Source: Neoechinorhynchus agilis
Lineage: Eukaryota > Animalia > Acanthocephala
Reading direction: 5' to 3'
Length of the DNA stretch: 64,000 bases
NCBI GenBank assembly: GCA_051530055.1
Contig: CM121341.1
Coordinates: forward strand, 18,454,784-18,518,783
Shown piece by piece: positions 5,510 to 62,320 of this stretch. The notes under the pieces were generated by a model that was not told the DNA's origin, did not search any database, and saw only the letters and a list, made by a program, of their open reading frames with translations. The position numbers and the translations under genes were made by a program. The first letter of the stretch is position 1, and each line of letters starts with the position of its first letter.

Positions 5510-7771
5510 TCAGTTCATGCGCAATTTTTGTTGTAACGAAAAAGGCGTTGTTTCTGGTGATTTCCTTTCGAGACCTCCCGATCCTCCTGTTGATCGTGGA
5601 GGTTTGGATGTCGGTGGTTCGCTAAGGTCTAAGAACTTGCGAATTCCAAGGTCCTTGGAGAAGCGAGAGCAGTTGCTCTCTGATTTCGAGCATCAATCTC
5701 AAGTCCTAGTAAACAATTCCCAGTTGACATCGACAAAGCAACAAATTCCAAAATACTCTTCTTTACCGACAAAAAGATGGCCTTTCATAGCCATTTAAAT
5801 CCAAACCTATCCTACCCAAACAAATCATGTACGACCGAGCAGTAAGTCCGTGGACTCGTACCATCAAGAACGATGGTATTAAAAGGATCGATCACGAATC
5901 TACCTGACTTTATACAATTGGTTGGATCACCCTGTCAAGTTTTCGAAATCTAACCTCTCTAAAGAAGTCTACGATATTACGTCAAGTTCTCAAAAAGTTC
6001 AATTTCTGGTTAAAGGTGTTGAACCTTCTCTCAGCAAAGAAGAACGGGACGAGTTTGAACAAACTTTTGGATGCAATATAAAGTTTTTTCTAAACTCAAG
6101 AAGGACGGGCCAACCTATTTCTATTGCCATGGTGGAAGGACAAAGGAATGTGCGTGATGACTTATGTTCTCAACAATTTTGCTCCTTCAACTGCTTCGAA
6201 ATTAACTTCGTGATGAAATCAAACTATGAGCAAGATGATTTCATCTTTCCGCGATGCAATATCTGTCAGCATTGGGGCCATTGGTGCCAACACTGCCCCA
6301 ATCCTTCTCACAAAAAATATTGTCACTGTGGGGATTCCTCTCACGGTTCGGATCAATGTACCAGTTCAAATTAACATTGCCCAAATTGTCAAGGATAGTA
6401 TTCGTCTTTTTACAATGGATGCCCAGAATTCAAAAATTACGGGGCCTGGGCTCAGAATTCTCGTATTAACGCCGTGGAAAAAAAGGAAAAAGCTCATTAC
6501 TACAACTAAGCAAGTAGCGCCTAAACTCAATTCATTGCTTCCAGTACCCTCCTTTCGACAAGACGCCAACTCTAACTTCTCAGGATTTTCCGGTAACGTG
6601 CCCTCTACTCAAGTGGTACCCATGGAGGTGCTAGAGAGCAAATTAGATGAAGCTTGTAACAAGATTCTAATGATTACGCAAGCTCGTTTTATGGAGGCAA
6701 TGCTGGCTTTTGAAAGAAAGATGAGCGTCTTAATTGATAAGTTAATGAACATTCCGACTATTTTTTCCTCGTGTTTACCAGAACAGAGCTCTGCAAAACT
6801 TCAAAGAGCGAATGTGTCTGGCGAGGTTGCACGAGCAGCCAAAAAGCCGAATGGCGGCTCTCGCTCACAGCACGAGGATGATGTTGTGATGGATGAAGAT
6901 CAATCAACTTCTGAATTCGTTGCAAGAATAATTGAAACCCAATCCAGGCTGATCGACAACGGAACAGCCAATTTGATTACAAATGCCAATGCGAAGAAAC
7001 TTTGACTCGATGGCTCAGGAGAAGGTAGGCAATGTTAAGGTGTTGCAGTGGAACTGTGGGGGTGCGATCAACCTTTTCAAGCTCACTCGATATTTACCAG
7101 GAATATCCATAGCTCTCATTCAAGAGTCAAAAAGCGTTTTTAATTTAGAGCAACTATATGTTCATCTGCTCCTTTTAAAGTCTTCGGTTTTTACATCTTT
7201 CGTTCATTCTCCCTATGGACTTGCCACACAAGGCCTTATTTCCATTTTTCAATCTTCCCTTGTTCCCTCACTGATCATGTCCTATTCCTCTGAGGAATTG
7301 TCTTACAGTATTTTTAAAATACTTTTCAAAAAGAGCTATCTCTCCCTTGCGAATATTTACATAAGACCAGGTCTCATTCATCGTTCACATGTAAAAGACA
7401 AAATCAAATGGCTCCTAGGGGCTAACATCGATCTTATTGTGGGAGATTTTAATGATCCATCCTTGAAATGGTCTCGGGCCGTTGTTAACGCTGTCAATCC
7501 TTCCCATTCTCTTATCATGCCTAACAATCCTTCATTTCACAATATTTCTACCAACAAACACTCCTTTTTGGATCTAGTAATATTTAAGAAAATTTTAAAC
7601 CTTTCAATCGAATATGATCGCCAAGTCTCCAATTTTGTCCTCTTAGGACACGACATCTTGATTTGGTCCATTGGTCTCTTTGACAGGCTGCGCAAAGTGT
7701 ATCACTTATCACCTTTAAATTTAGCGTTTTTTTCGGCTAGTTTGCGAGAAAATTTTCTTACACTTAGGTTC
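5510..7771 (+). mobile_element. 5' half of an I/Jockey-like LINE (ORF1 with three CCHC knuckles; ORF2 APE)
   Basis: Begins at a TCAGTT initiator-like motif; CNICQHWGHWCQHC, CHCGDSSHGSDQC, CPNCQG knuckles (about 6250-6430); APE motifs VLQWNCGG, LIQES, VGDFN, FLDL, GHD (6983-7770); interrupted at 7772 by an LTR element. Confidence 0.85.
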
Positions 7772-7911
7772 TGTGATGGCCCTTAGTTGGCTTTTATTAA
7801 ACAAAACGGACACTAATGATGGATGCACGCACCGCGCGCACATGGAAGGTTTTATATCGATGTAGCGCATAAATTAATTACGCGCATCGATCTATATCGC
7901 AATTCACATAA
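7772..7911 (-). repeat. 3' LTR
   Basis: Near-identical to 14059-14198; purine-rich ggcggaagg precedes it on the minus strand. Confidence 0.95.
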
Positions 7912-10900
7912 ACCTTCCGCCGGATTCTTTTCGGAAGCGAGTCGAGCGACGGACCAGCTTTCCGTTTTCGGATGTCCACGTCGAACCTCGTACCTGCAGC
8001 GCAGTATCCGAAGTAGTTTGTTCAGCAGGCTCGTCTGAAGTAGGTTGCCGTCAAGGTTATCTTCTTTTTCGACATCACATGTAATGTCATTCGGTACCCC
8101 ACCTTCCGGCACTTGAGATTCCTTCACTGTAACGTCCGAAGCGCTCGTATCGCAAGCGGGGGCTATTCTTTGTGTCGAGACTGAGTCCTGACGTCCATCA
8201 AGGTATTTAACTATATCGTATTTTTCATTGGTATCGATCAATTTGGATTTTTGGGCAGAATCTTCACTTTTCGATTTCGCGGGCCCATTCTTCACCCATA
8301 CGGATTCTCCAGATCGGAGCCATCTAGGAAGGTTAATTCCAATCGGTACTCTCCTTTCATAGCAGAACATTCGCTCGTGAGGTGTCTTTCCAGTAGAGGT
8401 ACAAAGCAGCGATCTTAGATTTCCCAGAGCTTGTACCAACGCTTCGTCCCACTTTGTTATTGGCCAAGACTTGTCTTCCAATGTTAGGAGGACCGTCTTC
8501 CAAAGGGTACCATTGAGACGTTCACATTGTCCATTGGCATGAGGACGATAGGAGGTTGTGTGACTTGAGCATATCCTTAGCGAAGTTAGCCAATCGCGTA
8601 ATGTTCTAGAGGTGAAGCAGGAGCCGTGATCAGAGTGGATAAAGGACGGACATCCAAAGAGCGAGAATATTCGTTCGAGGCATAATTTGACGCTGTCTGC
8701 CGAGGTGTCCTTACAAGCGAATGCTATAGGATAACGAGAAAACTCGTCTATTGCCACGAATAAATATTTGTATCCGTGCGTTGGCGTTGGTAAGGGTCCT
8801 TTGAAATCCACGGAGATTCTCTCCCAGGGCGCCATCGCTTTTATCAATTTCAAGCTCGATTGAGGTTTGAAAAAGCGAGGTTTCAAGTGGTAGCAAATGG
8901 GACATTCTGCAGTGATCTTTCGCACGTCATTCAAATCGAACGGTAAGTTTTGCTGTCGAATGAAATGAAGTAGTCTAGTGTTTCCGGGATGGCCGAGAGA
9001 CCGATGAACGTCTTTTAGTTTATTGAACGATATGTTCATTGACGCACATACATTTCTCGATAGTGCGTCCGCACTCAAATTGTCTTTGCCGGGTCGGAAT
9101 CGGATACTATAGGAGAACATCGATAACTGTAGCTTCCACCGCAAAATCCTGTCGTTCCGGATCTTCCCGGCGTGTCGTTGATTTAGCATGAAGGAAATGG
9201 AACGCTGATCTGTGATAACGGTGAAATGGCGCGTTGAGAGGTGTCACTTCTATTCTCTTATCGAATCGACTATGGCTAATGCTTCTTTTTCGATGATATG
9301 ATAGCGTTTTTCATATTTCGATAATGTTCGACTATAAAACGCTACAGGTCTGTCGTTCTGAAAAAGGGCCGCCCCTATGGCATTGTCTGACGCATCGCAT
9401 TCCAGAGTGAATTTTCCATCGTCCTCAATCGCATTCACAGTAGCTTTTTTAATATCTTCCTTCAAGCTGCGAATGACAACGATTTCTTTGTGATCAAGAG
9501 GAAAAGATACGTCGGCAGCGATTAGTGGTTGTATTTTGGTGGAATAATTAGGAATCCACCGACTGTAATACGCAAAAAATCCTAATAAACGCCTTAAGGT
9601 CGCTTTGTTCGATTGAGTTCGGATTTCGTCCAAGGGTTTAAGCCGCGAAGGATCTGGTTTCAGCTGTCCTGCGCCGATATCGTATCCTAATATTCGAATG
9701 GTTTCTCTGCAAAACGTACTCTTTGCTTCGTTCAACTTCAATCCGGCAAGCGATGTGACTTTTTAAAACGGTTTAGATTTACATCGTGTTTTTCACGGGT
9801 TTTGCCACATACAATAACGTCGTCCAAATAGGCAAAGGTAGCTTTTAATTCGTTCCCATCGATTACGTGGTTCATGAATCTCTGAAAGGCGGCCACTACA
9901 TTTGTCACTCCCATGGGGATTCGCGTAAAGCGATAGAGTTTTCCGCAAGCTTCGAAAGCTGTAAAATTGCGCTCTTTGATCTGTATAGGTACCTGATAGT
10001 AAGCGTCTTTTAGGTCTAAGTGGCTGAAATATCTATATTTTGCGATTTCGTTTACAAGAGAGCTTAATTTGGGAAGCGGATAAGCGTCCAAGTACGTGAA
10101 CCTATTTATAGTCTGCGAAAAGTCAACGACAAGTCGCTTTTTCCCATTTTCGCGCTTGACGACAATCACTTGGGCTCGCCAAGGTGAGTTCGCGGGTTCT
10201 ATGACTTGATCTCGCAATAGTCGATTGATTTCTGCACGGTTCGCTCAAATTCTCAAAGAGTAGGGGTGAATAGTGAGACTGCTTGGTATTGACCGATGCG
10301 ATTCGCAGATCTAAACTTTCCATAGTTCCTCCCGGTTTTATCCGCATCTCAGAATGTAAGCGAATAAAGGGTATTCCAAGGATAACATCGGAACATAAAT
10401 CTTCTAATACAAACAATTCCACCTTCAAATATTTTCTTTGTTCATACTGTATGTCCACCAGGCATTTTACCAACACATTTCGAGACGAATTACCCGCGGC
10501 CATCAGGACGTTGAGATTAACAGGCGTGTAACATATCCGTAGTTTTCGGCTCGCGCTCATATCGATGAAGTTTAAAACACTTCCAGTATCCACTAAAGCC
10601 GGCATTTGACCATTTGAAACATTTATTGAGATTTGAACACGTTTGTTGAACTGAGCTTCGAGATTGCTGGTCGCAAGAAAAATCGAAGATACGCTTTTAT
10701 TCGTCAATTTTCCTTTAGTCTTACAAACCCTAGCGAAGTGGCCCTGCTGGGAGCAGCAGTAACAGACGGCCTCTTTCACCGGGCACTGAAATCGAGGATG
10801 CCGTTTAAGTCCACAGAAATAGCACAGGTTAGTCCCGTTTCGTGACATTTTCGTTATTTTCGATGGCTGGGTCTTTACGGTTGCGTCACATTCAACGGTT

Positions 10901-11529
10901 TCCAAAATGGAATCCGAGCTATAACCAGGATTGATGAAGCCGACAGAACCAACCTCGGGTTTATGGTTGAAATGCGCCAAACTTTCCACCGCATTCTGCA
11001 TAGATTTTGAGATCTCGATTGCTCTGTCAAGATCCAAATGCTCGTTCTCCAAAAGTCTTTGGCGGATAGAGTCAGATCTCATTCCAGCAATGAACGAATC
11101 ACGAAGGAAATCGTCCCGAGCTTCCTCAGCGGATACATTTTTGAAATGACAATTTTTAGCCAACGATCGGAGGGATTGAATAAATTGGTCGATATCTTCG
11201 TTGTCTGCCTGTTTTCGTATGGACAAGAAATACCTGGCCATGATTTCGTTGCTTTCTTTTAGGAATAAACGATCTAAAGATTTCAGAGCATCATCTAGAG
11301 AGGTCTCCTCTTCGACGAATTCGTAATCGTCCGCGCCTATGTTCAGAAGTAGAGTGTCGATGGAAACACCTCCATCAATTGATTTCAGAAGGTGTTGGAA
11401 ATTCCGTCTCCATAACTTGTACTTCTTCAACGCTCCCTCCTCATGAGGCAATACGTTGAATCGTTCAAGACGCCATGAAGGCTTCGAGACGTTGAGCTCG
11501 CTCGGTAGCGACAAATTATGGATCACCTT

Positions 11530-13998
11530 TGTGGCAGCAACTTCTTTCACGGGAATGACGTGTACCCGCAAGAAGTTTCCCTTAGACGAAAGACGAAAGA
11601 ACAACATACAGGTAACTCATGTATGACAGGATAATAAACATCGTCTTCTTTACGTGACACCGCCAAATTGGTGACCCCGACGAGACTTGAACTCGCAACC
11701 TTCTGATGTCTTCCGGGGCTACCGGGATCTGGTGGTAGCCTTTGACCAAGTCGATCTTTGAGAAGGTTGAACCTCCGTGCAGGTTGCCGGCAAAATCGTG
11801 GATGTGCGGCAGAGGGTATCTGTCTGGCTCCGTCGCATCGTTTATTTGTCTGTAGTCCACACAGGGCCGCTTGGTTCCGTCGGCCTTGTCGACTGTATGA
11901 AGGGGGCTCGACCACGGAATGCTTGACTTGCGGGTGATTCCATTCTGTTCGAGCTTCCTGAACTCTTCTTTTACTGTCCGGAGGATATCTGGAGCGAGGC
12001 GCCGTGCCTGTGCGTGTCTCGGTGGTCCGCGTGTCACTATGTGATGTTGTACCTGGTGCCGCGCAGCCGAGTCGAATCTCGGAGTTAGGACAGCTGGGTA
12101 CCGGAGGAACAAGGCCTCGAAGTTGTTACTGGGCCTGGTCAAGACGGTGACCAGTTGGGTTGACCCCGGCGTCTGAAGGGGTATTGTGGTGGTTCTTGTA
12201 TTGGACACCAGTCTCCTGCCCTGCAAGTCGATCATTAGCCCGACGTTTCGGAGGAAATCGGAACCAAGGATGGGGTGCTTGACGTCGGCTATGATAAACT
12301 TCCACCAGTATCGGGCCCGGCCTGCAAGGTTGAGCGATAGACTTTTCGTGCCGTAGGTCAAGATGGTGCTGTGGTTGGCGGTGATGAGGCTTTTTTTGTT
12401 GGGGTGGGCTCGATCGTTTCCGGAAGGTGGAACGATGCCGACTTGCGCCCCTGTGTCGACGAGGAAACTCCGACGGGAGTTTGCATCGAAAACGAAGAAA
12501 AGGTCGCCCATGTTGCTGGTGCCGGTCGCTTGGGCGATTATTGTCGGCCGGCATCGGCGTTTCCCTGTGTTGTTGAGGCCACTTTGCCGTTGAAAATGCA
12601 GGGTGGGATGCAGTTCCTGGCTCGGTTGCCCCACTTGGCATGGAAACGACATATACCTGGTATAATCCTCGCAGATGATTTGTTTTTGTGGCGTTGTCGA
12701 ATCACGTCCACCATTGGGCTTGTTTGAGCGATCGCACAGATTGTGGAGTCTCCTGTGATTTGGAAATAGAATTTGTCTGCAACTTCGGCCAGTTCGGTCA
12801 ATTTGAGAGTATCCATGGATGCGACCAGTTCACGGACCTTGGTCGGCAGCTTGTTGATGTAGTGGTACCGAAACAAGGGATCGGCAGCCGGGTTCGAGTT
12901 TGAAGCGTACAACGCCAACATGCGTTCCAGTAAGCGGGAGGGGGGTATCCTCGTTGATTGTCATCTCCACTATCTCCTGCATCCGCCGATATTCGGGAAT
13001 GCTGAAGATCTGCATCAGGCGAGCTTTCAGCGCATTGTACCGATCGCCGGGGGTGGCAGGTTGGCGACATAACTGCAGAGACCTGCGCAAAGGCATTCCT
13101 CGGCGCCTGGGTTGCTCGGTTCGGCGTACCGAGTCATATTACCTCCGACAGAGGAAACCAATTCACCTCCGGTATCTGGACGCACCTCGGCGAAGCCCTC
13201 GGAGTAGACGTCCACCGTACGACCGCCTACCACCCGCAAGCCAACGGCATGGTGGAACGTTTCCACCGACAGCTCAAATCCTCCCTCACGGCTCGCTTCT
13301 CATCATCGGCGTGGGCCAGGGACCTGCCTTGGGTCCTCTTAGAGCTCAGGACCTTGCCCAAGGAAGACCTCGGTTGTTCCCCGGCGGAAGTAGTCTACGG
13401 ATCAACACTGCGACTACCTGGAGAGTTCGTTCAGGACGCTGCATCGGAGATACCCAGCCTCCGTTTAGCACAACTCAGAGACAAGCTAATGGATTTAATG
13501 CCCGCGCCTCCCAGGTGGACCAAGAAGGCCAACAGCAATCACCCTACCAGAATGCCAGCTTCCCTTGATAATGCAAAATTTGTGTTTGTCAGGGTCGACG
13601 CAGTCAAGTCCCCGCTATCTTGTCAGTATGATGGCCCGTACAGGGTCCTACAGACCGGTGCCGTATCGGTAGACCGATTAAAGAGAGCTCACGTGAGCCC
13701 GCAAACAAATGACCACATCCATGTACCACAAATCCCTGATCCGGTGCTGCCTCCGGTACGGCCTCCCAAACAGCAGACGACGCGCTGCGGTCGGCAAGTC
13801 AAAAGACCGGCACGTTTCCAAGACGGAACAGAGTAGTGCGGCGACACTGGAGGGGAGGTATGTGGCGGCAACTTCTTTCACGGAAATGACGTGTACCCGT
13901 AAGAAGTTTCCCTCAGCCGAAAGACGAAAGAACAACATACAGGTAACTCATGTATGACAGAATAATAAACTTCGTCTTCTTTACGTGACGCCGCCAAA
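11530..13998 (+). mobile_element. CsRn1-like Ty3/gypsy element nested in gag of the host element; internally deleted, gag-PR-RT segment inverted
   Basis: 138-bp LTRs 11530-11667 and 13861-13998; PBS TGGTGACCCCGAC (complement of tRNA-Trp 3' end) at 11669; PPT ggaggggaggta; 4-bp TSD CCTT; integrase (SDRGNQF, TTAYHPQANGMVERFH) on plus 13065-13836; gag/PR (FLVDTGA)/RT on minus about 11703-13062. Confidence 0.92.
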
Positions 13999-14058
13999 CC
14001 TTCTTGGAATCCATATCGGAATTGTTAGTCGTTATAGGAATAGTTTTGTTTAATAAAT

Positions 14059-14198
14059 TGTGATGGCCCTTAGTTGGCTTTTATTAAACAAAACGGACAC
14101 TAATGATGGATGCACGCACTGCGCGCACATGAGAGGTTTTATATCGATGTAGCGCATAAATTATTTACGCGCATCGATCTGTATCGCAATTCACATCA
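14059..14198 (-). repeat. 5' LTR with TATA-like (GATATAAAA) and AATAAA motifs
   Basis: TGATGTGA...ATCACA termini on minus strand; flanked by TSD GGTTC. Confidence 0.95.
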
Positions 14199-14203
14199 GG
14201 TTC

Positions 14204-16130
14204 TGATTGCAAGTTGTCAGATATCTTACCTTTAGCATACTCCTTAGTTAATAAAGCCGCTAATTCTTATGTCACACCGTTAAAACCTTCTCTCGCCTTT
14301 ATGTGGGCCGATCACTTCGTTTTCTTGGACGCCAATTCTATGTAGCCCAACGCTCTGGGGATACCCTTCTATGCAAAACCCTATCAAGCCTTCTATAGAC
14401 TGCCCGTTGCCGACAGCGACAATGAAGGGATGCTGATTTTCTTGCTACACTCAAACTTTACTCTTCAAACTGGTGGCGTACCTTTTCTAATGAGGATAAA
14501 GTACCTTGGAGATCAAAAATTACGGCTTGGTTTAAATCCTCGACTTTGGAGGATATTCTTGCTCAAACTTTTGACTTCCATTCCGCAGGCTCCTCGACCA
14601 ACGTGCCGTCAATTTGTTTTCGTAAACTAATTCGTAATCGTACTGATATCTCATTAAATGACATTCTCGAAGTTTGGTCCACAAATCCGAAATTGGGTTC
14701 GGCTAACGGCTACCCCGGGACGAAAATTTTCACCTTGCTTCCTAGGGACTGCATAATCCTCCTTGCAAAGGCTATGCTATGCTGTTCGCCATACGCGTGA
14801 AGGGTTTTCAATGTTTCTAGACGCATTTTCTTGGTCAAAAATGGCAGGAAGGCTATTGTTGAACCAAAGGATGTTCGTCCAATCTCGCTTCAAAATCCTC
14901 TAGTTAGCATATATGAACGCGCCCTTGCAAATAGGTTGAGATCTTTCATTAATGAGCATAATTGCATCTCTCCGAACTGTCATGGCTTTCTAAAGGGAAA
15001 TCAGTTCATTCTGCCCTTGCAGAGGTTTACTCCAATTTTTCCTGCTCTAACCAGCCCATGCGAGCCATTCTTGCCGTGGACATTTCTCAAGCTTTTGATA
15101 AGATTTCTCTTTCTTTTATTATTGAAATGCTTGAATTTTTCAGTCTACCTCACAATTTAATAACACGTATCCACAATATTTTATTTACAAAATCCTTTTA
15201 CTACGAAGACGACGCCTCAAAGACACTTTACTACTCGTCCAATGGTGTTCCGCGGGGTCGACTCTGTTACCTATTCTTCTCCTTATGGCATCACAATACT
15301 TGATTCAGAATTTTAAAGTTCGGGCCTCGCTCACCTGCTACGCGGATGATTTTACTTTTGTCATCTTCACCCACAGAGCAGCTAGAATGAAACTCCTGAT
15401 TGAGCAATGTATTGATTTTCTTAACTCCTTTTTATCTAAAATGAACTTATCGTTGAATAAGTCGAAATGTTTATGCATTTTTAAAGTTCGCTCAAGCAGA
15501 ATTAGGAAAGATTTAAAATCCTTTTTCAACAATTTAATGAATAACCCTGACACCTCTTCTTCAGGTTTTACGAATACACCCCTTAAAATTAAAATATTGG
15601 GTCACACCTTTACTGCTAATCTCTCGCCTAGATTAGATTTGAATAAAATGAAAAAATGCTCACTTTAGCATCGAAAAAGACGAAGCGCGCCGTTACTCTC
15701 GGGTTAAACGCTAATCAATGGCAAACTATTTACAAAAGCTGGAGCATTCCTGGCCAGGTCTTTTTTTCTCGAGGTCGCTCCCCCCGGAACAAAAGGCTTT
15801 ACTCATCAACACGTTCTGCGATATGGGCCGGAGAATTGAGGATCTTCTGCAACAGTAGACTTATGAGATGGTCTAGTTGAACGATACTGATTAGTTTCTT
15901 GTTTTGGTTTTTCTTCTCATACTGCCACATGATGAATAAATCTGTATTATTATTGGTACTGAAAATAAAACATAGAGTTAGTAAAAACATGCCGGCATCA
16001 GGATACAAAATGAAATCGATTTGGCTTGATCTTCCACCGCTTGAGTATGTGTAAAGGTGCCGTGGGTCCTATTGAAGTATGTATTGGAAATACGCAACTC
16101 CAACGCTACTGCGTAATCCAATAGTTTTAC
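14204..16130 (+). mobile_element. 3' half (RT) of the I/Jockey-like LINE begun at 5510, degenerate
   Basis: Resumes after TSD GGTTC; RT motifs RPISLQN, CHGF, VDISQAFD, NGVP, YADD; 3' end approximate. Confidence 0.8.
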
Positions 16131-26340: not shown

Positions 26341-27182
26341 ATTTTTATCAGAGAATCAACTGTACGATTTAGAAAGGGATCCCATCGGTACTCTGAGCGT
26401 CCGAAATTGTAACTTTTTTAAAAGAATCTCAAAAAATCCTTAAGATACATTGATAAAAAAATCTAGGAAGAGTTGTTGTAACTGAATAGGCTATAGCGTA
26501 TACAAATGATCTTGCAGCAATCCCTATTTGATCCTTAAACTTTCTACTCCAGTGAGGGAGAACCGCCATAACTCAAAGTGCGAAGATAATGAAATACTGT
26601 TAAGACTTGCCGACATAAAAAAGATTAAAAGTTTGCTGAAAATAAAATAAGGAATTGGTACAAACTATTTTGAATTTCTCTTTTCTAAAATGCAAAAATT
26701 GTTTCTAATTCCATCAATTTATTAGCTCCGAAATTAAGAATTTTTTGTCCTGTGATGAAAAAACTCATCGCATTTATGCATTTGCAGTCTTACCAATGGA
26801 ACAAGTGCCTTTAGAACTATTGCAGGCAGAAAAGATTCGAGATGTTTCTATAAATGATGACGCAAATATGTTGACAGTTAGAAACCGCTACAATCAAGGA
26901 GAATTGAACTGTTCATTCATCGCAGAAATCAATGGCTTACTCCCTAGTAGCGCACATCGGTCATCATGCGCCTCATGCAGCACGAATTGTGCTGTGCTCC
27001 AAGCGGTCGCGCAAAGCGAATTCCGCTTGCCTGTTTAACCAAAATGTTCGCAAAAAGGACTAAAATGTTCAGAAAATTAAATGCAAATAAGTGTTACTGA
27101 TTCGAATTCGAGGTGCATGTATTCAGCTTCCTTTCGCATTCAGTGATGTCTTGACATAATCTTGACGTTCGAATAATTTGCA

Positions 27183-27585
27183 AAGATCTTTAGATTTTCA
27201 CATCGGAGAATTTCATCAATCTCCATTGATGTTTAGAGTGCATTTAAAATTTAGGATTTGTTTAACAAACAGCAGTGCGTTACAGTCTCTAAATTTCGTC
27301 ATTGCACACGAAATCAAATATCCTCTAATAATTTTGCTTTTAAATTTTTTGTGAAAAGGTTTTAAGATTTCACATCTGAGAGTTTCATCAATCACCATTG
27401 ATGTTTAAAATGCGTTTAGAATTTAGGATTTGTTTAACAAAAAGTCGTGCGTTTAGTATCTAAATTTCGTCATTTCAAATGAAATCAAAAATCATCTAAT
27501 AACCTTACTTATAGTAAAGACTTGAGCAAACAGTCTTATTATTTTAAATCTGAGAATTTCTTTAATTCTTATTGTTGTTTTTTAC
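27183..27585. repeat. Degenerate tandem repeat, about 175-bp period, 2.2 copies
   Basis: gatttcacatc..tttcatcaatc..cattgatgttta..atttaggatttgtttaacaaa..ctaaatttcgtcatt..gaaatcaaa recurs at about 27190 and 27365. Confidence 0.8.
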
Positions 27586-35765: not shown

Positions 35766-38306
35766 ATGGTCAACTTCACAGTCGAAGAAATTCGAGGTTT
35801 AATGGACCACCGCCGTCACATTCGAAACATTAGTGTGATAGCTCATGTTGACCACGGGAAGTCCACATTAACTGATTCATTGGTTTCTAAGGGAGGGATT
35901 ATTGCTCAGGCTAAGGCTGGAGAGGTTCGCTTTACGGATACGAGGAAGGATGAACAAGAGCGATGTATTACAATCAAATCAACGGCTATTAGTCTTTATT
36001 ATGAAATAAAGGATTCAGATTTGGCGCTAATGAAGCAGGAAAAGGACGAAGGCATCAATCACGTATTGATTAATCTAATTGATAGTCCTGGGCACGTTGA
36101 TTTTTCGAGTGAAGTCACTGCCGCTCTTCGGGTTACCGATGGAGCTTTGGTTGTGGTCGATTGTGTTAGTGGCGTGTGCGTCCAGACGGAGACTGTGTTA
36201 AGACAGGCGATCGCCGAGAGGATAAAACCCATTTTATTTTTGAACAAAATGGATCGTGCTCTTCTTGAGCTTCAACTCGAGCAGGAGGAGCTGTACCAGA
36301 CGTTTCAGAGGATCGTGGAAAGTGTCAATGTTATCATCGCCACTTATGGAGATGACGGCGGTCCTATGGGTGAAGTTCAAGTTCATCCGGAACGTGGAAC
36401 TGTGGGATTCGGTGCTGGACTTCACGGGTGGGCATTTACCCTAAAGGAATTCGCTGAGATGTACGCGAGTAAGTTTGGAATCGAGATTACCAAACTGATG
36501 AAGCGTCTTTGGGGAGACAACTTTTTTAATGTCAAAACGAAAAAGTGGACTAAGAATCAATCGTCGAAAGATGACGTCCGTGGCTTCAACCAATTTATCC
36601 TTGATCCAATATTTAAGGTCCTTAAGGCAATCATGGACTGTAAGAAGGACGAATACATGAAACTGCTCGATAGGCTCAACGTCAAAGTGCCAGTTGAAGA
36701 ACGCGAAAAGCTGGATATAGGAGGCAAACCTCTTCTTAAGGCTGTGATGAGGTATTGGTTGCCCGCCGGAGATACTCTTCTAACGATGATTGCCTTGCAT
36801 TTACCTTCTCCCGTTGTTGCCCAGAAATACAGAGCAGAAATGTTGTACGAAGGACCTCACGATGACGATGCTTTTAAAGGTATCCGCGATTGTGATGTGA
36901 ACGGGCCTCTGATGATGTACATTTCTAAAATGGTACCGACATCAGAAAAAGGTCGTTTCTACGCCCTCGGACGTGTATTCTCAGGAGTTGTATCGACGGG
37001 ACAAAAGGCCAGGATAATGGGGCCAAACTACGTTCTTGGCAAAAAGGATGATTTATCGATCAAGGCTATACAAAGAACGATTATTATGATGGGTCGATAC
37101 GTTGAGACAATCCCCGAAGTGCCATGTGGAAATATCTGCGGTCTAGTTGGCGTCGATCAGTTCTTGGTAAAGACTGGTACAATCACGACCTACGAACATG
37201 CCCACAACATGAAAGTGATGAAATTCAGCGTAAGTCCCGTTGTAAGAGTTGCAGTTCAACCTAAGAATGCAGCGGATCTTCCAAAACTCGTCGAAGGACT
37301 GAAACGACTGTCAAAGAGTGACCCGATGGTACAATGTACAGCATGTGAGAGTGGAGAGCACATCATTGCCGGTGCTGGTGAACTCCACCTTGAGATTTGC
37401 TTAAAAGATCTCGAAGAAGATCACGCTGGAATTCCACTCAAGGTGTCGGATCCCGTCGTTACGTACCGTGAAACCGTTGGTGGTCAGTCAAGTGAAGTTT
37501 GCCTTTCCAAATCGCCCAACAAACACAATCGATTGTTCATGCGGGCGTGTGCAATGCCAGAAGGACTTCCGGACGATATTGAGAATGGCGAAGTAAATGA
37601 CAGACAAGAATTCAAGGCAAGGGCTCGCTATTTATCCGAAAAATACGATTACGACGTGGGTGAAGCCAGAAAGATATGGTGTTTCGGACCCGATGGAACC
37701 GGTCCGAATGTCATCATGGACTGTACTAAAGGAGTTCAATATCTTAATGAGATAAAGGACTCCGTTGTTGCTGGATTCCAATGGGCAACAAAAGAAGGTC
37801 CTCTATGTGAAGAAAATGTCAGGGGAGTCCGGTTCGACTTACTCGATGTTACTCTCCATGCCGATGCAATTCATCGTGGCGGCGGTCAGATCATCCCAAC
37901 TGCGCGACGTGTCTTGTATGCATCGATGCTGACAGCACGTCCAGGTCTCTTTGAACCTGTATATTTGGTCGAGATTCAAGTTCCCGAAGGATCCTTAGGT
38001 GGGGTTTATTCAGTTCTTAGCAGAAGACGCGGACAAGTCTTCGAAGAAAGTGCAGTGATGGGTACACCAATGTTCGTGGTGAAAGCCTATTTGCCGGTCG
38101 CAGAATCATTCAGTTTTTCGTCGGATTTGCGATCGAACACTGGAGGTCAGGCGTTTCCACAATGTGTATTTGACCATTGGCAGATGGTTACCGGCGATCC
38201 ATATGATGAGAAATCCAAGATCCGGACGATTGTTGATGAAATCCGAAAACGAAAAGGATTAAAACAATCCCTCCCCGATGTCAATGATTATTTCGATCGT
38301 CTTTAA
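35766..38306 (+). CDS. EEF2: Eukaryotic translation elongation factor 2, intact and intronless (846 aa)
   Basis: MVNFT start, [10 protein letters not shown]-loop, RFTDTR, DSPGH, NKMD, diphthamide loop [16 protein letters not shown]-terminal IRKRKGL. Confidence 0.99.
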
Positions 38307-38559: not shown

Positions 38560-39030
38560 GTGAACACTTACAAAAGACGGGATATTCGTAGGCAGGAGAG
38601 GGAAAAATAAAGCTGTAATAAAATTTGGAGAGATCAGGCGAAAGGATTCCTAAATGGCGGAGGCGTTTGAGGTGGTAAATTTTAAAGGTATTGCGTTAGA
38701 GAGAGTGATGTGCGAGTCCCATTTCAAGTTTGATTGAAATTGGATACCCAGAATTCTGAAAGAGGTGACTCGTCGGATGTCATTTGGAACATCCGTGTAG
38801 GATATGGGGTTGCGGGAGATTGAGGGGATCATCTCGAAGCATTTAGAGAAATTTAGATAGAGTTTGTGATTGGTGCAGAAATCATTTATGTGCGCGATTT
38901 CGTTAGACGTTAACGAGAGGGTCGAATGGTGATTGACTGATGAGATCGTCGGCTATGTGATAAGGTTATTCAAATACATCTTCCTTAAATAGAACCTCAT
39001 CTATTTGAGAGAATAGGAAGGCCGCTATAT
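38560..39030 (-). mobile_element. CR1/L2-like RT 3' fragment
   Basis: IAHINDFCTNHKLYLNFSKCFEM..FRILGIQFQSNLKWDSHI; homologous to 51984-52400 and 61995-62320. Confidence 0.8.
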
Positions 39031-39606
39031 TTTGGTTGGCAAAGTAAGACTTTTCCCCCCGTCTAATTCACATACAATTTTAAGGCAGTCTTAAAAAATC
39101 TGATTTTCTTGTAGTTTTTATTATGGAAATTCTGCCATCACAATCGGGCTATTTACGTTTACTGAATATTTGATGAACATATTTTTGGAGTCCCTCGTTT
39201 CACAGGCCATTTCTTTAAAGCGATCAGGACGAACTTTTTAATATCTACGTCGTGACACAGAAGAACTGCTTCGACTGTTGTATACGCCTCCGCATCCGTA
39301 AGTGAAGAAATTTCGATTGATTTCTGTGTGGTTTCTGCTCACTTCGTCTCATTTCTGGATATAATTAACGGGAAGAATGGGTATCGGTTTATTGTCCTCA
39401 ATATTTCGTTCGCCTCACTTCAAGTGCGAATAAAACACGTAAACATCAAATAAGGCCGATTATAGTCTAAAACTCCGGATAATGCCAAAATGAGGAAGTC
39501 TGAAGAGACGGACGAAATATTTAGATCAATATCTATTCCTCTCATCACTAAAAAGAACACATATACAAATGAACAACTTCTTTACAGATATATTAAAGTT
39601 TGTTCA

Positions 39607-40293
39607 ATGCTATCCCATCTTGCCAGTCGATTAATTGGATCGCATTTCACCACTGCATCCATCTTAAGGAACTGGAGACCATTCTCGGCCACTCCATCTC
39701 GCCTCTACGCTCAAGTGCGTCATCCAGCTCCGAGTTTCGCCGGAAAGGCTGTTCTTAATGGTGAATTTAAGGAGATTGCATTGAGTGATTACCAAGGCAA
39801 ATACTTGGTCTTATTTTTTTATCCTCTTGATTTCACGTTTGTTTGTCCGACTGAGTTAGTGGCCTTTAATAGGCGATTAAACGAATTTAAGGACATCAAC
39901 GCTGAAGTGGTTGGCGTCAGTACCGATTCTCATTTTTCGCATTTGGCATGGACAAATCTCAGTGAAAAACAGGGCGGTGTCGGTCAATTAGAGTACCCGC
40001 TTCTATCAGACTTTAACAAGTCCATTTCACGGGACTACGGTGTTCTACTCGATACCGATGGAATTGCTCTAAGAGGTTTGTTTGTGATTGATCCAACGTC
40101 AGTCATTCGCCATATCACCATTAACGATCTTCCCGTTGGACGCAGTGTGGATGAGGTTCTAAGAATTGTCAAAGCGTTTCAATTTGTAGAAACGCATGGT
40201 GAGGTATGTCCAGCAAATTGGTCGGAAGATAAGAATCCAAGAACAATCAAACCTGATCCAAAGGGATCGCTTGAGTATTTTAAAGACGTGTAG
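39607..40293 (+). CDS. PRDX3: Typical 2-Cys peroxiredoxin with mitochondrial-targeting-like N-terminus (PRDX3-like), intronless
   Basis: [14 protein letters not shown] (peroxidatic Cys), GEVCPANW (resolving Cys), SLEYF; Arg/Ser-rich leader MLSHLASRL..; the upstream in-frame ATG at 39490 is probably not the start. Confidence 0.9.
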
Positions 40294-41162: not shown

Positions 41163-44160
41163 GTTTTTTTTTGTCGAAACAATTTATTTTAAAATGATTA
41201 AATCGTCCCCCGGACGCTGACCGCATTTCCTCGTTGGATTGCGAGGCTTATTCTTTGTATCAGGAAAATCCTCTCGCGTCGCTCCCCTGTTTCTGCTGCA
41301 AGTCGTCTTCCGAGTTCGGCACAAAAGCTTCGTGCCGAAGATCCCAGCGCCCCTTGTGTCTCCACGCCGAAAGGAAGGAAAATGTAATTTTGTTTCAGCT
41401 CATTGTATTTCTCCGCTTTCCTCCTTTCGGCGGCACTCGCTGCTCCTCCCGTCTCCGCTAAAGCATCTTGCCGGTTGGACATGGCGAGTGGGTCCACGCA
41501 TGTTGCGTCCCAAATTAGACTCTTCCCTTCTTTCCAAGGGAAAACGGTTATACCGTCGGGACGCTTACCATCCGAGCGACAGAGGTGATTGGGCTCCAGG
41601 ATGGTTGGAACGTGGATCGAGTTCAGAGCTCTGTTAATGATCGCGTTGAGCTCTGCGTGCCTTGGGAAACGACCGCTAGATCTCTTGCAGTAGAGTCCAT
41701 GTCTCCCGAGCACGTCAACTTTTATTCCACATCGGCACTGGTGTGGGGCACAGGTTGGAAGTCCTAAACGTAGAGCGACGGCTATTCGAACTGTCTCGTC
41801 GTCCAGCAAAGTTCCCAAAGTACCAATTGGCAAAACGTTCAACCATGCGCCTGACTCATTCGAGAAACTGGCCACAAGTCTAGCTTGAGACATCTCGTCC
41901 ATCTGGCCTTTTAGTTTGTTGTGAGCCGTCAGGATTAAGGGGTTATCCCAAGCAGATTGTTCGTGCGCGTTGGTTGGAGCTTGTTGCAGACCGGTCTGCG
42001 AGAGCCATGATGTGACTCCCTGTTTCAATAGTTTGCATGGCTTCGGCATTCTGTTTAAAAGAATTTCCCCCTGTAATTCCTCCGTCTTGTGCATCGAGGA
42101 TACGAATGCCGGAAGGGCCAAACCAGCCACACTTCGTAAGCCTAAACCTCCGTATTTGATCGGAAGGGCAGCTTGTTGCCAAGCTTCATCAGTGATGGCG
42201 CAGTTCGTTACCTTCTCAAGATGCTTTTTCATCAAACCATCTAAGTCAAGGAGACGTTTGGTGTGTCGGAAGTACGGGGCTGCTCTCATCTTGAACATAA
42301 GCTTCGGTATGTATAGGCAGTTTCTCACCAAGAAGAGAGCTTCGTGTGCATTCAATTCTTGAACGCAGGAGCACAAAAGATCCAGTTTAGGGAGCTCTTC
42401 TTCAATCTCGCGATCTATGTTCGCATCCAGGACGCAACTGCCGAGAAGAGTGAAGCTTTGCCGGTTGATTAATCGGATTCCTGGGGCAACGGATTCGAAG
42501 GACTGCATTATATCCGCCATGTGAGAATGTGAAATATTTAGTGGCAATAGTTCACACTTCGCGGGGTTGACACGTAGGCCAAATTCCGCAGCAGAAATAA
42601 GCAGGGATTGCAGGTCTTCTAGAAGCGTCTTTGGGTCACCGCCCAATGTCGCGTCATCCAAGTACCAGACGTTCAAACTTGCCTTGAGCTTACGAGATAT
42701 TCCATTGGTTGTTAAGGAAAATCCTATGGGGCCGAGAGGATCGCCTTGTTGCAGGCCTGTTTCGGACCAAATGGTGTGCTCGTTGAAATGTAGAGGTGTC
42801 TTAGAACCATACGCCTTCACAAAGTATTCATAGGCTTCAGGTAATTCTCGAGCAATGGTACTTAGCAAGGCTGTTCGATCGACTGTATTAAAGGCGTTCG
42901 AAAAGTCGACTTTTAGGACAACCGTTGGGGTGGCAGAGGCGTCGATATAGGTATGTGTGGAGTGCACTATCGCTTCTGCTCCACATGGAGTACAGCAGCC
43001 CAACTGAAAAGGTCTGAGTTGCTCACTTACCCTTTCGCTCAGTCGCTTACACAAAATCTTCCCTGCCAAACGTCCTAGAGTGCAGCCCACAGCTATCGGA
43101 CGAATATCTCCGTTTGATTTGGAAAGGGCGCAAAGAGATGCCGAGAATAGAAAATTCGTTGCTTCAAGTGGGAGAGGTCCATTTATGATTTCGTCGACCA
43201 CATTAACGAGTTAGGTTTCGAGCTTCATTCCCATCACTCCCGTTCCAAATCCCAACATATCCTTGATGTGTTGGGGTCGAAGTCCGTCGGGTCCATGTCC
43301 CGACCCATTGGGGAACGAGGATACAGCACATCTAAGTTCCTCCCGCGTGCACCTCGTCGATTGACGCGACTTTTCCGGTATCGGGGGCAAAATCGGTGGC
43401 AAAGCTGAAGGATGCTTACTTCTCAACGCCTCCAGTGTCGAGCGGTCGTTGTCCGCAAACGTAGCTGTGGAACTGAGTAACCTGACCGCTCCACGGACAT
43501 CTGCGTCTGCCAATTTGGCAGAAATCCTATTACTCAAATTATAAGGACGGCCGAAGGGTCCTTCTGGACGTTTCTTGGCAAGAGTTTGATTATTGTAACT
43601 TTTCGTCACAGCCTCCTCAAAAAGTCGATCAAAATTGGTTATCCGCTGCTTGATGGTGGTCGTGAGGTTGGACTCGGGGTCACGGCTAGTACTCAGAACC
43701 AATTTTGGAAAGGCGAATAAACGTGAATAGTTTGTATTCGTCGGTTCAGATAGGCAGTTTGCCAGCAGCTTAGAAGACCATTTCACAGCAGCCATTCCTG
43801 GCTCCTTTTGGAATCCTCTTCAAGACCGTTTTTGGAAGATATTGTAAGAGGCGCTTCATCACATTTTGAGTTTCGAGACTGTCGATGATAAAAGGTTTGT
43901 CCAACACTGGTGGAAGGGAAGATCCAGGGCATCGAGATCGTACCGGGCCATGTTTTCGAATGAGCCCACTTATCGTCACACCTATGACGCAATCGCATAC
44001 AGTACAGCGAGTCGAAATCGAGGGCGAAGTGGGCGGAGGGAAGAGATCTGCCTCCGTTGGCATGAGCGGCATTGTTTGTAAGTGTTTACTACTTTGGTGA
44101 AAATTGAATAATAACTGTTCAGCAATGGGAAGAACGGTCTCTTGTTCAATGTCCACCTAT
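41163..44160 (-). mobile_element. Near-complete CRE-clade non-LTR retrotransposon (zinc finger, RT, RLE); one frameshift and one stop
   Basis: CTVC..KH..C finger, LQQGDPLGP, YLDD, CRCG..GRHGLYC, RPDG..WDATC, SLAIQRGN; A-tail at 41163-41170; ORF segments 43770-44156, 43211-43795, 41198-43201. Confidence 0.95.
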
Positions 44161-51983: not shown

Positions 51984-51984
51984 A
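51924..51984 (-). ncRNA. Twister ribozyme motif (type P1) at the RTE 5' end
   Basis: U^AAC CCA GCC [AUCGGG-GAAG-CCUGAU] GCCGG UCCC AC GC CCGG AUAAA UGGG GA AGG: P2 CCCA/UGGG, P3, P4 CCGG/CCGG and twister-conserved UAA, GCC, UCCC, GC, AUAAA all present; two core substitutions. Confidence 0.85.
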
Positions 51985-61994: not shown

Positions 61995-62320
61995 CGCTGT
62001 TGTGAAATTTGGAGAGGGCGTGTGATTTGGATCCGAAATGGCGGACATCAGCGACTTAGAATTCTGATGTCTTTTGGAAGATCGAGGTAGGATATGAGGT
62101 TGCGGGAGATTGATGGGATCGTTTCAAAGCATTCAAAGAAGTTGAGGTAGAGTATGTAATTGGCGCATAAATCGTTTATGTGTGTGATTTCGTTAGAGGT
62201 TAAGGAGAGGGAAAGATGGAATGATGATTGGGCGATTAGGGCGAAGATCGTCGGCATACAAGAAAAGCTTAGAGTGAGAGGAAAGAGGTTTAAGTTCGTT
62301 GAGGAAATTATATCTGTTGC
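61995..62320 (-). mobile_element. CR1/L2-like RT fragment
   Basis: Homologous to 52020-52410 (ITHINDLCAN..YLNF..KDIRIL). Confidence 0.8.

What the first reader, a model, noticed from the sequence alone, without database searches (positions are those of the whole stretch)
14043..14094. Gypsy element with no tRNA primer site: PBS position is a perfect 15-nt complement of its own LTR
Seen: on the element strand, 1 nt after the 5' LTR end lies TTTATTAAACAAAAC (14057-14043), the exact reverse complement of GTTTTGTTTAATAAA inside the LTR (14094-14080), with a 22-nt loop. There is no TGG-type PBS, unlike the other two intact gypsy elements here. Established: Tf1/sushi chromoviruses prime reverse transcription by folding the transcript 5' end onto the PBS and cleaving it. 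The geometry here fits, since a 3'-OH after ..AAUAAA would extend into U5. Inference: this element shows no recognisable chromodomain, so it could be a self-priming lineage outside the known group. Alternatively the hairpin hides the 5'-LTR AATAAA poly(A) signal, which lies inside the stem. Both could be true.
Basis: partly seen in the sequence, partly recalled or inferred. Interest (0 to 1): 0.8.

Follow-up and report, generated by a model that had tools for sequence, protein, structure and literature searches.

The report
Self-priming gypsy retrotransposon lineage in animals
This decayed gypsy retrotransposon has no tRNA primer site but a perfect complement of its own LTR, and dozens of relatives from corals to a stingray share this, so a large animal lineage probably primes reverse transcription with its own RNA as yeast Tf1 does.

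Summary
On the minus strand, the 15 nt at 14057-14043 lie 1 nt after the 5' LTR. They are the exact reverse complement of 14094-14080 inside the LTR, which ends in AATAAA. The loop is 22 nt and there is no TGG-type primer site.

It is not a local accident. In 40 of 63 related loci the same position holds a perfect 11-19 nt complement of the element's own LTR. Named hosts are shrimp, crab, butterfly, spider, snail, soft coral and stingray. The arm sequences differ between families but always match:
- 16 of 16 pairs show changes on both sides.
- No pair shows a one-sided (G:U) change.
- 95% of cells are paired, against 65% in shuffles.

The elements are compact (about 4.1 kb, LTRs 85-300 nt). 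No integrase examined has a chromodomain.

The best explanation is Tf1-type self-priming. The 5' LTR segment pairs with the primer site, is cut after the hexamer and is extended. Hiding the 5' poly(A) signal is a likely second role.

The window copy is dead: it is frameshifted and carries a 2.2-kb foreign block. Placement against named clades, the transcription start and the cleavage were not tested. I found no prior description in the searchable literature.

The parts
14199..14203 (-). 5' target-site duplication GAACC
   Evidence: Same 5 nt follow the 3' LTR at 7771-7767.
14059..14198 (-). 5' LTR, 140 nt, TG...CA
   Evidence: Aligns with 7772-7911 at about 96% identity.
14137..14143 (-). TATAAAA in the 5' LTR, 50 nt upstream of the 5' arm (candidate TATA box)
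   Evidence: Read from the sequence. Function is inferred from the consensus only.
14080..14094 (-). 5' arm, the proposed primer segment GUUUUGUUUAAUAAA. Its last 6 nt (14085-14080) are the AATAAA poly(A) hexamer.
   Evidence: Perfect 15-nt complement of 14043-14057. The homologous arm is found in 40 related loci.
14066..14078 (-). Small hairpin GCC-N7-GGC directly after the arm
   Evidence: Predicted in the minimum-free-energy fold. An equivalent RCCU..AGGY hairpin opens the loop in 24 of 31 families against 35% of shuffled loops.
14058..14058 (-). Single spacer A between the LTR end (CA) and the primer binding site
   Evidence: The same 1-nt spacer occurs in nearly all relatives.
14043..14057 (-). 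Primer binding site, UUUAUUAAACAAAAC, complementary to the element's own LTR
   Evidence: There is no TGG. Covariation with the LTR arm across 30 families.
13861..13998 (-). First copy of a 138-nt direct repeat (leader and start of gag)
   Evidence: 94% identical to 11530-11667.
11668..13860 (-). Foreign 2.2-kb block: sense protease plus the N-terminal part of RT from another element, and an antisense integrase fragment
   Evidence: Pfam hits on ORF 11582-12652. Only 26-36% amino-acid identity to the element's own RT. Antisense integrase similarity by tblastx.
11530..11667 (-). Second copy of the 138-nt direct repeat, continuous with the element's own gag
10123..11607 (-). gag (two CCHC knuckles) and protease ORF
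   Evidence: Pfam protease hits. Alignment with relatives P0001-P0008.
9250..10217 (-). Reverse transcriptase and RNase H, split over two frames (10217-9738 and 9741-9250)
   Evidence: Pfam RVT_1, RT_RNaseH and RT_RNaseH_2.
7852..9189 (-). Integrase ORF (zinc-binding domain and catalytic core, no chromodomain)
   Evidence: Pfam rve and Integrase_H2C2 only, at E <= 1. Homologues.
7913..7920 (-). Polypurine tract GCGGAAGG close to the 3' LTR
   Evidence: Sequence. In relatives the purine tract directly abuts the 3' LTR.
7772..7911 (-). 3' LTR, with its copy of the arm and AATAAA at 7807-7793
7767..7771 (-). 3' target-site duplication GAACC

Best explanation
The element belongs to a large, compact gypsy (Ty3/gypsy) lineage of animals that has no chromodomain and primes minus-strand DNA synthesis with its own transcript, as Tf1 of fission yeast does.

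Proposed steps:
1. The 12-19 nt near the 5' end of the RNA, which end in the poly(A)-type hexamer of the LTR, fold back onto the complementary site that starts 1 nt after the LTR.
2. The element's RNase H cuts after the hexamer (...AAA | RCC).
3. The new 3'-OH is extended over the spacer A and the 21-69 nt of R/U5. This makes a very short strong-stop cDNA, which transfers to the 3' R.
4. When the plus strand later copies the RNA primer, the primer site is rewritten from the LTR arm. This would keep the two arms strictly Watson-Crick complementary in each new copy.

Because the hexamer is inside the duplex only at the 5' end of the RNA, the same pairing probably also masks the 5' poly(A) signal.

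Shown here: the complementarity, its exact position, its covariation and its spread through the lineage.
Inferred: the fold-back, the cut, the transcription start, the rewriting of the primer site and the poly(A) masking.

The window copy itself is a dead, rearranged member.
For: 1. Position. The complement starts 1 nt after the CA that ends the LTR, which is where the primer 3' end must sit. This holds in the window and in relatives.

2. Spread. 40 of 63 loci with enough upstream DNA have a perfect inverted repeat of 11 nt or more at one fixed spot, about 1310-1500 nt before RT. A control zone gives 3 of 43. Loci without it also lack an LTR pair flanking RT, apart from two doubtful pairs, so they are mostly truncated copies.

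3. Covariation in a gap-free anchored alignment of 30 families:
- 95.4% of cells are paired against 65.0% in shuffles (0 of 500 reach it).
- 16 of 16 pairs have changes on both sides, in 124 cells.
- There are no one-sided (G:U) changes.
- The covariation score is 0.735, against 0.159 for shuffles and at most 0.128 for slid partners.
- AATAAA/TTTATT alternates with ATTAAA/TTTAAT.
- The close pair L029 and L035 differs by G->T in the arm and C->A in the primer site.

4. Several different primer sites, each matching its own LTR, occur among contigs of one WGS accession set (WLWD01: L015, L029, L047). A shared cellular primer would not give this.

5. A second small hairpin abuts the arm in 24 of 31 families against 35% of shuffled loops. 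[quoted passage not shown]

6. The Tf1 mechanism is established: the first 11 nt pair with the primer site and RNase H cuts between nt 11 and 12 (PMC7175516).

7. No Rfam family matches the region.
Against: - There is no experimental evidence. The transcription start, the cut and the primer are not mapped in any member.
- The TATA-like box in the window LTR lies 50 nt before the arm. The RNA may therefore start 10-25 nt upstream of the arm, unlike Tf1, where the arm is the very 5' end.
- A conserved A-G-Y lies exactly 11 nt from the predicted cut and looks like an initiator. Yet complementarity usually runs to 13-16 nt. The two facts do not fit one simple model.
- The families in the anchored alignment were chosen by having a perfect arm of 11 nt or more. 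The absence of G:U pairs in the inner 11 positions is therefore partly built in. The set defined by LTR boundaries is free of this bias.
- A few families have arms that do not end in a recognisable hexamer (L020, L043).
Confidence: 0.75

Rival explanations
1. The pairing is only a regulatory or structural stem. It hides the promoter-proximal poly(A) signal, or serves packaging or dimerisation. Reverse transcription is primed by some other, unidentified primer.
For: The hexamer lies inside the duplex in most families. The partner strand exists only at the 5' end of the RNA, which is the logic of 5' poly(A) occlusion in retroviruses (my own knowledge of the HIV-1 poly(A) hairpin).
Against: - The complement begins exactly 1 nt after the LTR end in nearly every family. 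That point is set by where minus-strand synthesis starts.
- No other candidate primer site exists between the LTR and the gag ATG, which follows 0-40 nt after the arm.
- An RNA stem kept only by selection should tolerate G:U pairs, and none is seen in 30 families (with the selection caveat).
- Families whose arm hexamer is non-canonical keep the pairing and have a canonical AATAAA or GATAAA further down in the loop (L002, L032, L050, L047). The pairing is therefore not tied to the working poly(A) signal.
Confidence: 0.1
2. Priming works in trans. The arm of the second co-packaged genomic RNA, or of a short prematurely terminated LTR transcript, anneals to the primer site, rather than the same molecule folding back.
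For: Sequence data cannot tell cis from trans. All the complementarity evidence fits both.
Against: The loop is short (21-69 nt), and the conserved hairpin next to the arm suggests a compact intramolecular fold, as in Tf1. There is no direct evidence either way.
Confidence: 0.1
3. The primer is a cellular RNA (a tRNA 3' end, an internal tRNA fragment or a mitochondrial tRNA), and the match to the LTR is secondary.
For: A core of the primer site is fairly conserved (consensus TTTAATnAACTAAA). A shared primer could produce that.
Against: - There is no TGG.
- The variable positions always match the element's own LTR.
- At least three different sites occur among contigs of one WGS accession set.
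- Hosts range from cnidarians to a vertebrate.
- The two tRNA genes in the window do not match.
- Caveat: the host's full tRNA set could not be searched.
Confidence: 0.03
4. The match is a chance event or a local inverted duplication in this one decayed copy.
For: The sequence is AT-rich, and the copy is rearranged.
Against: The fold z-score is -3.8. The same architecture is found in 40 related loci. Cross-family and shuffle controls are negative.
Confidence: 0.01

Closest known systems
Tf1/Tf2 of Schizosaccharomyces pombe and the Tf1/sushi group of self-priming chromoviruses (Maggy, Skippy, Cft-1, Boty, Grasshopper, Afut1, sushi, Tcn1)
   Same: - No tRNA primer site.
- The site next to the 5' LTR is complementary to a segment of the element's own LTR transcript.
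- A further stem-loop lies next to the duplex.
- Gypsy-type gene order.
Sources: PMC7175516, PMC6934838, PMC6317226.
   Different: - No chromodomain or Tf2-type SH3 domain in any integrase examined.
- In a rough integrase tree the lineage is a tight clade apart from chromodomain-bearing hits.
- The arms are 12-19 nt rather than 11.
- The arm ends in the poly(A) hexamer.
- LTRs are only 85-300 nt and elements about 4.1 kb.
- Hosts are animals, from cnidarians to an elasmobranch.
- It is unknown whether the arm is the very 5' end of the RNA.
Plant Ty1/copia TAR lineage (Houba, Osr-1), predicted to self-prime
   Same: Self-priming was inferred from LTR-to-primer-site complementarity, without experiments (PMC6317226).
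   Different: It belongs to a different superfamily with the copia gene order, and its hosts are plants.
Steamer and other Mag-lineage gypsy elements of marine invertebrates
   Same: Compact animal gypsy elements with short LTRs (153-219 bp), CCHC gag and no chromodomain.
   Different: Steamer-like elements carry a classical 12-nt tRNA-Leu site, TGGTGTCAGAAG, right after the LTR (PMC8905726). Whether the present lineage falls inside Mag in the broad sense could not be tested.
Poly(A) hairpin of HIV-1 and similar occlusion of the 5' poly(A) signal in retroviruses (my own knowledge)
   Same: The copy of AAUAAA near the cap is held in a stem, so only the 3' copy is used.
   Different: Here the partner strand is the primer binding site outside the LTR, not a local hairpin inside R. 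One duplex would therefore serve both priming and masking.
Skipper elements of dictyostelids, which lack a canonical primer site
   Same: Gypsy-type elements without a TGG site, for which unconventional priming is suspected (PMC5006619).
   Different: Skipper has a polypyrimidine stretch and no complementary LTR region. It also has a chromodomain.

Membership tests
Ty3/gypsy LTR retrotransposons (Metaviridae) | pol domain order protease - RT - RNase H - integrase | tested here: met
   Pfam hits in that order on the minus strand from 11607 to 7852. Relatives have the same order.
Ty3/gypsy LTR retrotransposons (Metaviridae) | Direct LTRs ending TG...CA, a short target duplication, and a polypurine tract before the 3' LTR | tested here: met
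   LTRs 14198-14059 and 7911-7772, target duplication GAACC, purine tract GCGGAAGG.
Ty3/gypsy LTR retrotransposons (Metaviridae) | gag with CCHC zinc knuckle(s) | tested here: met
   Two invariant C-X2-C...H...C motifs in the alignment of 9 gag-protease proteins. Nucleocapsid matches in PDB.
Self-priming LTR retrotransposons (functional class) | No site complementary to a tRNA 3' end next to the 5' LTR | tested here: met
   No TGG after the LTR in the window or in about 40 relatives. The tRNA genes in the window do not match. The host's full tRNA set was not available.
Self-priming LTR retrotransposons (functional class) | The sequence directly 3' of the 5' LTR is complementary to a segment of the LTR | tested here: met
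   15/15 in the window and 11-19 nt perfect in 40 of 63 loci. Controls.
Self-priming LTR retrotransposons (functional class) | The pairing is conserved through compensatory change among relatives | tested here: met
   16 of 16 pairs have changes on both sides. Covariation score 0.735 against 0.159 for shuffles (0 of 500 reach it).
Self-priming LTR retrotransposons (functional class) | The complementary LTR segment is the 5' end of the transcript, is cleaved by RNase H, and is found as the primer on strong-stop cDNA | not testable with these tools
   This needs 5' RACE or CAGE and cDNA primer mapping. Only consensus motifs (TATAAAA at 14143-14137, initiator-like AGT) could be read.
Tf1/sushi chromoviruses | Chromodomain at the C-terminus of integrase | tested here: not met
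   No PF00385 or PF24626 hit at E <= 1 in 5 integrase-bearing ORFs of the lineage. About 100 lineage integrases have no such precomputed hit, while remote hits P0239 and P0246 do.
Tf1/sushi chromoviruses | RT/integrase phylogeny places the element inside the Tf1/sushi clade | tested here: inconclusive
   A neighbour-joining tree of the integrase core puts the lineage in one tight clade apart from the chromodomain-bearing hits. It has no bootstrap support and includes no Tf1, sushi, Mag or CsRn1 reference sequences, which were not obtainable.
Mag lineage / Steamer-like elements | tRNA-Leu type primer site (TGGTGTCAGAAG) after the LTR, as described for Steamer-like elements | tested here: not met
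   PMC8905726, compared with the window and its relatives.
Mag lineage / Steamer-like elements | RT/RNase H phylogeny with Mag, SURL, Jule and other references | not tested

The most novel reading that the evidence does not exclude
A pan-metazoan gypsy lineage without a chromodomain, found from cnidarians to elasmobranchs, replicates without any host tRNA. About 1,900 clusters at 50% identity match its gag-protease profile.

In this reading a single 12-19-nt LTR sequence serves three roles: the leader near the 5' end of the RNA, the primer of reverse transcription, and the poly(A) signal in the 3' LTR. The primer site is rewritten from it at each cycle.

Self-priming would then be either ancestral for a large part of Ty3/gypsy or have arisen independently of Tf1/sushi. 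These elements would also be blind spots for tRNA-based LTR annotation and for host defences that target tRNA primer sites.
Probability: 0.5. Interest if true: 0.7.

Novelty: new variant of a known kind. Interest (0 to 1): 0.62.

Why it matters
- **Scope of self-priming.** In the papers I could read it is treated as a peculiarity of Tf1/sushi chromoviruses, with a prediction for one plant copia lineage. A second, very large animal lineage with the same hallmark would make it a mainstream strategy. It would also bear on whether hairpin priming is ancestral for LTR elements, an idea raised in PMC3601003.

- **Annotation.** Pipelines look for tRNA-complementary sites. A 2026 survey of metazoan Ty3/gypsy searched only tRNA 3' ends and discarded LTR pairs closer than 5 kb (PMC13524379). 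Such pipelines will miss or down-score these 4-kb elements. The signature found here is simple to search for: arm ending in A(A/T)TAAA, then RCC, a loop, then CA, A and the complement.

- **Host defence.** Elements that need no tRNA should escape silencing by 3'-tRNA fragments that target tRNA primer sites (reviewed in PMC7472051).

- **Experiment.** Young copies exist in tractable hosts: LTRs are 100% identical in Palaemon carinicauda and Parnassius mnemosyne, and 98% identical in Biomphalaria glabrata. The mechanism can therefore be tested directly.

Tried and rejected
- **Chance or local inverted duplication.** Rejected by the relatives and the controls.

- **tRNA primer.** There is no TGG and no match to the two tRNA genes in the window. 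Primer sites differ among contigs of one WGS accession set.

- **Known RNA family.** No Rfam match at E <= 1 in 13700-14400.

- **Second gypsy element as a sister copy.** The element at 47177-51602 has a tRNA-type site but is only 26-27% identical in RT and integrase, so it is another lineage.

- **Naming the clade.** PDB profile search gave only Ty3, nucleocapsid and DDI1-type protease hits. Pfam on gag gave weak generic Retrotrans_gag hits. The supplements of the mollusc LTR paper hold no sequences. Source names in the protein searches are automatic ('17.6', 'opus', 'gypsy') and not informative.

- **Identifying the host.** The EF-2 ORF is not on record in the collection.

- **Key papers.** The primary Tf1 papers and the Cigr-1 paper are not in the library.

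- **Loci without the signature.** Apart from two doubtful pairs (L036, L060), they also lack an LTR pair flanking RT. I treat them as uninformative rather than as counter-examples.

- **Bacterial-type promoter and terminator scan.** Not meaningful for this eukaryotic element.

Full report
**Observation**

On the minus strand the 5' LTR runs from 14198 to 14059 and the 3' LTR from 7911 to 7772. Each is 140 nt, TG...CA, and they are about 96% identical. The 5-bp duplication GAACC lies at 14203-14199 and 7771-7767.

The LTR ends in CA at 14059, followed by one spacer A at 14058. Then comes TTTATTAAACAAAAC (14057-14043). This is the exact reverse complement of GTTTTGTTTAATAAA (14094-14080) inside the LTR. 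The two arms are 22 nt apart. The last six bases of the LTR arm are AATAAA.

- As RNA the region folds at -14.8 kcal/mol, against -6.0 +/- 2.3 for shuffles (z = -3.8).
- No TGG follows the LTR.
- The 15-mer does not match the two tRNA genes of the window.
- No Rfam family matches.

**The window copy is not intact**

The element spans 6.4 kb, but 13860-11668 is foreign.
- It holds a protease and the N-terminal part of RT from a different element, only 26-36% identical to the element's own RT.
- It also holds an antisense integrase fragment.
- It lies between two 138-nt direct repeats (13998-13861 and 11667-11530, 94% identical).

The element's own genes follow: gag-protease 11607-10123, RT 10217-9738, RNase H 9741-9250 and integrase 9189-7852. 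RT and RNase H are in different frames. Without the foreign block the element would be about 4.1 kb, the size of its relatives.

**Relatives**

The gag-protease ORF has only distant homologues, at 24-35% identity. I fetched their loci and read the junction after the 5' LTR. Each has a different sequence there, and each is a perfect complement of its own LTR, starting 1 nt after the CA where the LTR end could be set (in L004 the 3' LTR was not found):

| Locus | Host or source | LTR arm | Primer site |
|---|---|---|---|
| L001 | Palaemon carinicauda | TTGTGTGCAATAAA | TTTATTGCACACAA |
| L004 | Portunus trituberculatus | TTTGTGTTCAATAAAA | TTTTATTGAACACAAA |
| L002 | ENA assembly | TTAAGTTTGTTTAA | TTAAACAAACTTAA |
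| L003 | ENA assembly | TTGTTGATTAAA | TTTAATCAACAA |
| L006 | ENA assembly | TAAGTTTATTAAA | TTTAATAAACTTA |

An RT-RNase H search showed a wide lineage in invertebrates. A scan of metagenome contigs gave 80 more loci.

- **Loci with an LTR pair.** The longest perfect complement between the last 100 nt of the LTR and the next 25 nt is 11-19 nt in 24 of 32 loci. Cross-family pairings reach 11 nt in 5 of 932 cases and shuffles in 7 of 6400. Most of the eight failures had LTR ends set wrongly by contig-end overlaps. Three of them show the motif a little further on.
- **Scan without LTR information.** In the zone 1000-2600 nt before RT, 42 of 63 loci have a perfect inverted repeat of 11 nt or more, and 40 of these lie at one spot 1310-1500 nt before RT. 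An equal control zone gives 3 of 43.
- **Loci without the signature.** Apart from two doubtful pairs, they also have no LTR pair flanking RT, so they are mostly truncated copies.

Further named hosts were checked one by one:

| Locus | Host | LTR arm | Primer site |
|---|---|---|---|
| L087 | Hypanus sabinus (stingray) | CTTCCAGTCAATAAAA | TTTTATTGACTGGAAG |
| L088 | Biomphalaria glabrata (snail) | GTTTTATTGAAATAAA | TTTATTTCAATAAAAC |
| L089 | Parnassius mnemosyne (butterfly) | TTTTATGTTGAATAAA | TTTATTCAACATAAAA |
| L090 | Xenia sp. (soft coral) | TAAAGTTAAATAAA | TTTATTTAACTTTA |
| L091 | Trichonephila clavipes (spider) | TTCTAAGTCATTAAAA | TTTTAATGACTTAGAA |

A gag-protease profile finds 1,931 clusters at 50% identity with E <= 1e-30. 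The lineage is therefore large.

**Covariation**

I anchored 30 families at the 3' end of the LTR arm and the 5' end of the primer site. The alignment came out gap-free. Counting 16 pairs gave:
- 95.4% of cells paired, against 65.0% in shuffles (0 of 500 reach it).
- All 16 pairs with changes on both sides, in 124 cells.
- No one-sided change.
- A covariation score of 0.735, against 0.159 for shuffles and at most 0.128 when the partner is slid by 1-3 columns.

The first 12 pairs are Watson-Crick in all 31 families counted. Pairing then falls through 93, 81, 81 and 71% to background at pair 17.

AATAAA pairs with TTTATT, and ATTAAA with TTTAAT. Two close families differ by one compensatory change: L029 has CAAGTTGATTAAA / TTTAATCAACTTG and L035 has CAAGTTTATTAAA / TTTAATAAACTTG.

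Caveat: these families were picked for having a perfect arm of 11 nt or more. The lack of G:U pairs in the inner positions is therefore partly built in. The set defined by LTR boundaries is not affected.

**Common architecture**

The elements share this order:
1. A T-rich run.
2. The arm, which usually ends in AATAAA, ATTAAA, GTTAAA or TTTAAA.
3. RCC(U), which opens a small hairpin RCCU..AGGY. This is found in 24 of 31 families against 35% of shuffled loops.
4. A variable stretch, giving a total loop of 21-69 nt.
5. (A/T)CA, the end of the LTR.
6. One spacer A.
7. The primer site.
8. The gag ATG, 0-40 nt further on.

Families with a non-canonical hexamer in the arm often have AATAAA or GATAAA further down in the loop.

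**Mechanism**

The LTR edge marks where minus-strand synthesis begins, so the primer's 3' end must pair with the nucleotide just beyond the spacer. The only conserved partner for that site is the element's own LTR arm. This is the logic of Tf1, where the first 11 nt of the RNA pair with the primer site and RNase H cuts between nt 11 and 12 (PMC7175516).

Here the cut would fall after the hexamer. The strong-stop cDNA would then be only 22 nt in the window element.

In the standard scheme of LTR reverse transcription (my own knowledge), the plus strand copies the RNA primer. In that case the primer site is rewritten from the arm in each cycle, which would explain strict complementarity across very different sequences.

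Since the partner strand exists only at the 5' end of the RNA, the same duplex would hide the 5' hexamer.

Cleavage, transcription start and masking are all inferred.

**Unresolved**

A conserved A-G-Y sits exactly 11 nt from the predicted cut: G in 26 of 30 families and A in 20 of 30. It resembles an initiator. If its A were the first transcribed base, the primer would be 11 nt as in Tf1. Yet complementarity usually extends to 13-16 nt, and the window's TATAAAA lies 50 nt before the arm. I cannot settle the transcription start.

**Comparison with known groups**

- No chromodomain or Tf2-type SH3 domain is found in five integrase-bearing ORFs of the lineage at E <= 1. About 100 lineage integrases have no such precomputed Pfam hit, while the remote hits P0239 and P0246 carry them.
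- A rough neighbour-joining tree of the integrase core puts the lineage, with the window copy as an early branch, in one clade apart from those hits. It has no bootstrap support and no named references.
- Steamer-like Mag elements use a tRNA-Leu site (PMC8905726).
- The second gypsy element of the window (47177-51602) has TGGCGACGAGGAC after its LTR and is only 26-27% identical.
- The papers I could search describe self-priming for Tf1/sushi chromoviruses and predict it for the plant copia TAR lineage.
- None describes it for a chromodomain-less animal lineage. Older papers on Mag, Jule, SURL and Cigr-1 are not in the library, so an earlier mention cannot be excluded.

**Verdict**

The most likely status is a new variant of a known kind. 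The mechanism still needs an experiment, and the clade needs a proper phylogeny.

**Handling note**

I printed the window element only in pieces of at most about 900 nt. For LTR detection my scripts wrote the stretch 7000-15000 and copies of the fetched loci to scratch files.

Noticed in passing
window 11530-13998: A 2.2-kb foreign block lies between two 138-nt direct repeats (94% identical) in the leader of the target element. It holds a sense protease and partial RT from another element and an antisense integrase fragment. Direct repeats this long are not a normal target duplication. Template switching during reverse transcription, or a later rearrangement, could produce them.
   Followed up: partly
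window 47177-51602 (+): A second compact gypsy element. Its LTRs are about 125 nt and 99% identical, with 4.3 kb from LTR start to LTR start and three ORFs (47290-48495, 48511-49473, 49487-51184). It has a classical site, TGGCGACGAGGAC, 2 nt after the LTR. It is only 26-27% identical to the target in RT and integrase.
   Followed up: partly
alignment A5 columns 8-10; in the window about 14090-14088: In relatives a conserved A-G-Y lies exactly 11 nt from the predicted cleavage site, the same length as the Tf1 primer. The window copy has U-G-U there. It looks like an initiator, but complementarity usually runs 2-5 nt further.
   Followed up: partly
window 14066-14078 and the equivalent place in 24 of 31 families: A small hairpin RCCU..AGGY directly follows the primer arm. 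It may be an analogue of the U5-IR-like stem-loop that Tf1 needs.
   Followed up: partly
window 35766-38306 (+) and 39490-40293 (+): An uninterrupted 846-aa elongation factor 2 ORF and a 267-aa peroxiredoxin ORF lie between the retroelements. Both appear intronless. The EF-2 protein is not on record in the assembly collection, so the host stays unknown.
   Followed up: partly
window 6983-7786 (+): An ORF with a weak endonuclease/reverse-transcriptase (LINE-type) match ends about 15 nt into the 3' LTR of the target. The element probably landed in or next to a LINE fragment.
   Followed up: no
window 41198-43201 (-), 45225-45938 (-), 63191-63949 (-): Further ORFs with reverse-transcriptase domains, and LTR-like repeats at 38577-38951, 51984-52344 and 62044-62241 (73-90% identical).
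   Followed up: no
window 27156-27453: Two tandem copies of a unit of about 172 nt (77% identical). Each contains a near match to the 15-mer (GATTTGTTTAACAAA).
   Followed up: no
L001 7182-7676 and 11954-12448 (Palaemon carinicauda): A 495-nt block with (ATT)n microsatellites flanks the element on both sides at 99.6% identity, outside its 290-nt LTRs. This suggests insertion into a repeat, or a duplication that includes the element.
   Followed up: no
L005 and L006: The same 558-aa gag-protease protein is encoded on contigs of two independent metagenome assemblies (ERZ23491787 and ERZ21854043). The host of this family is therefore sampled repeatedly in environmental data.
   Followed up: no
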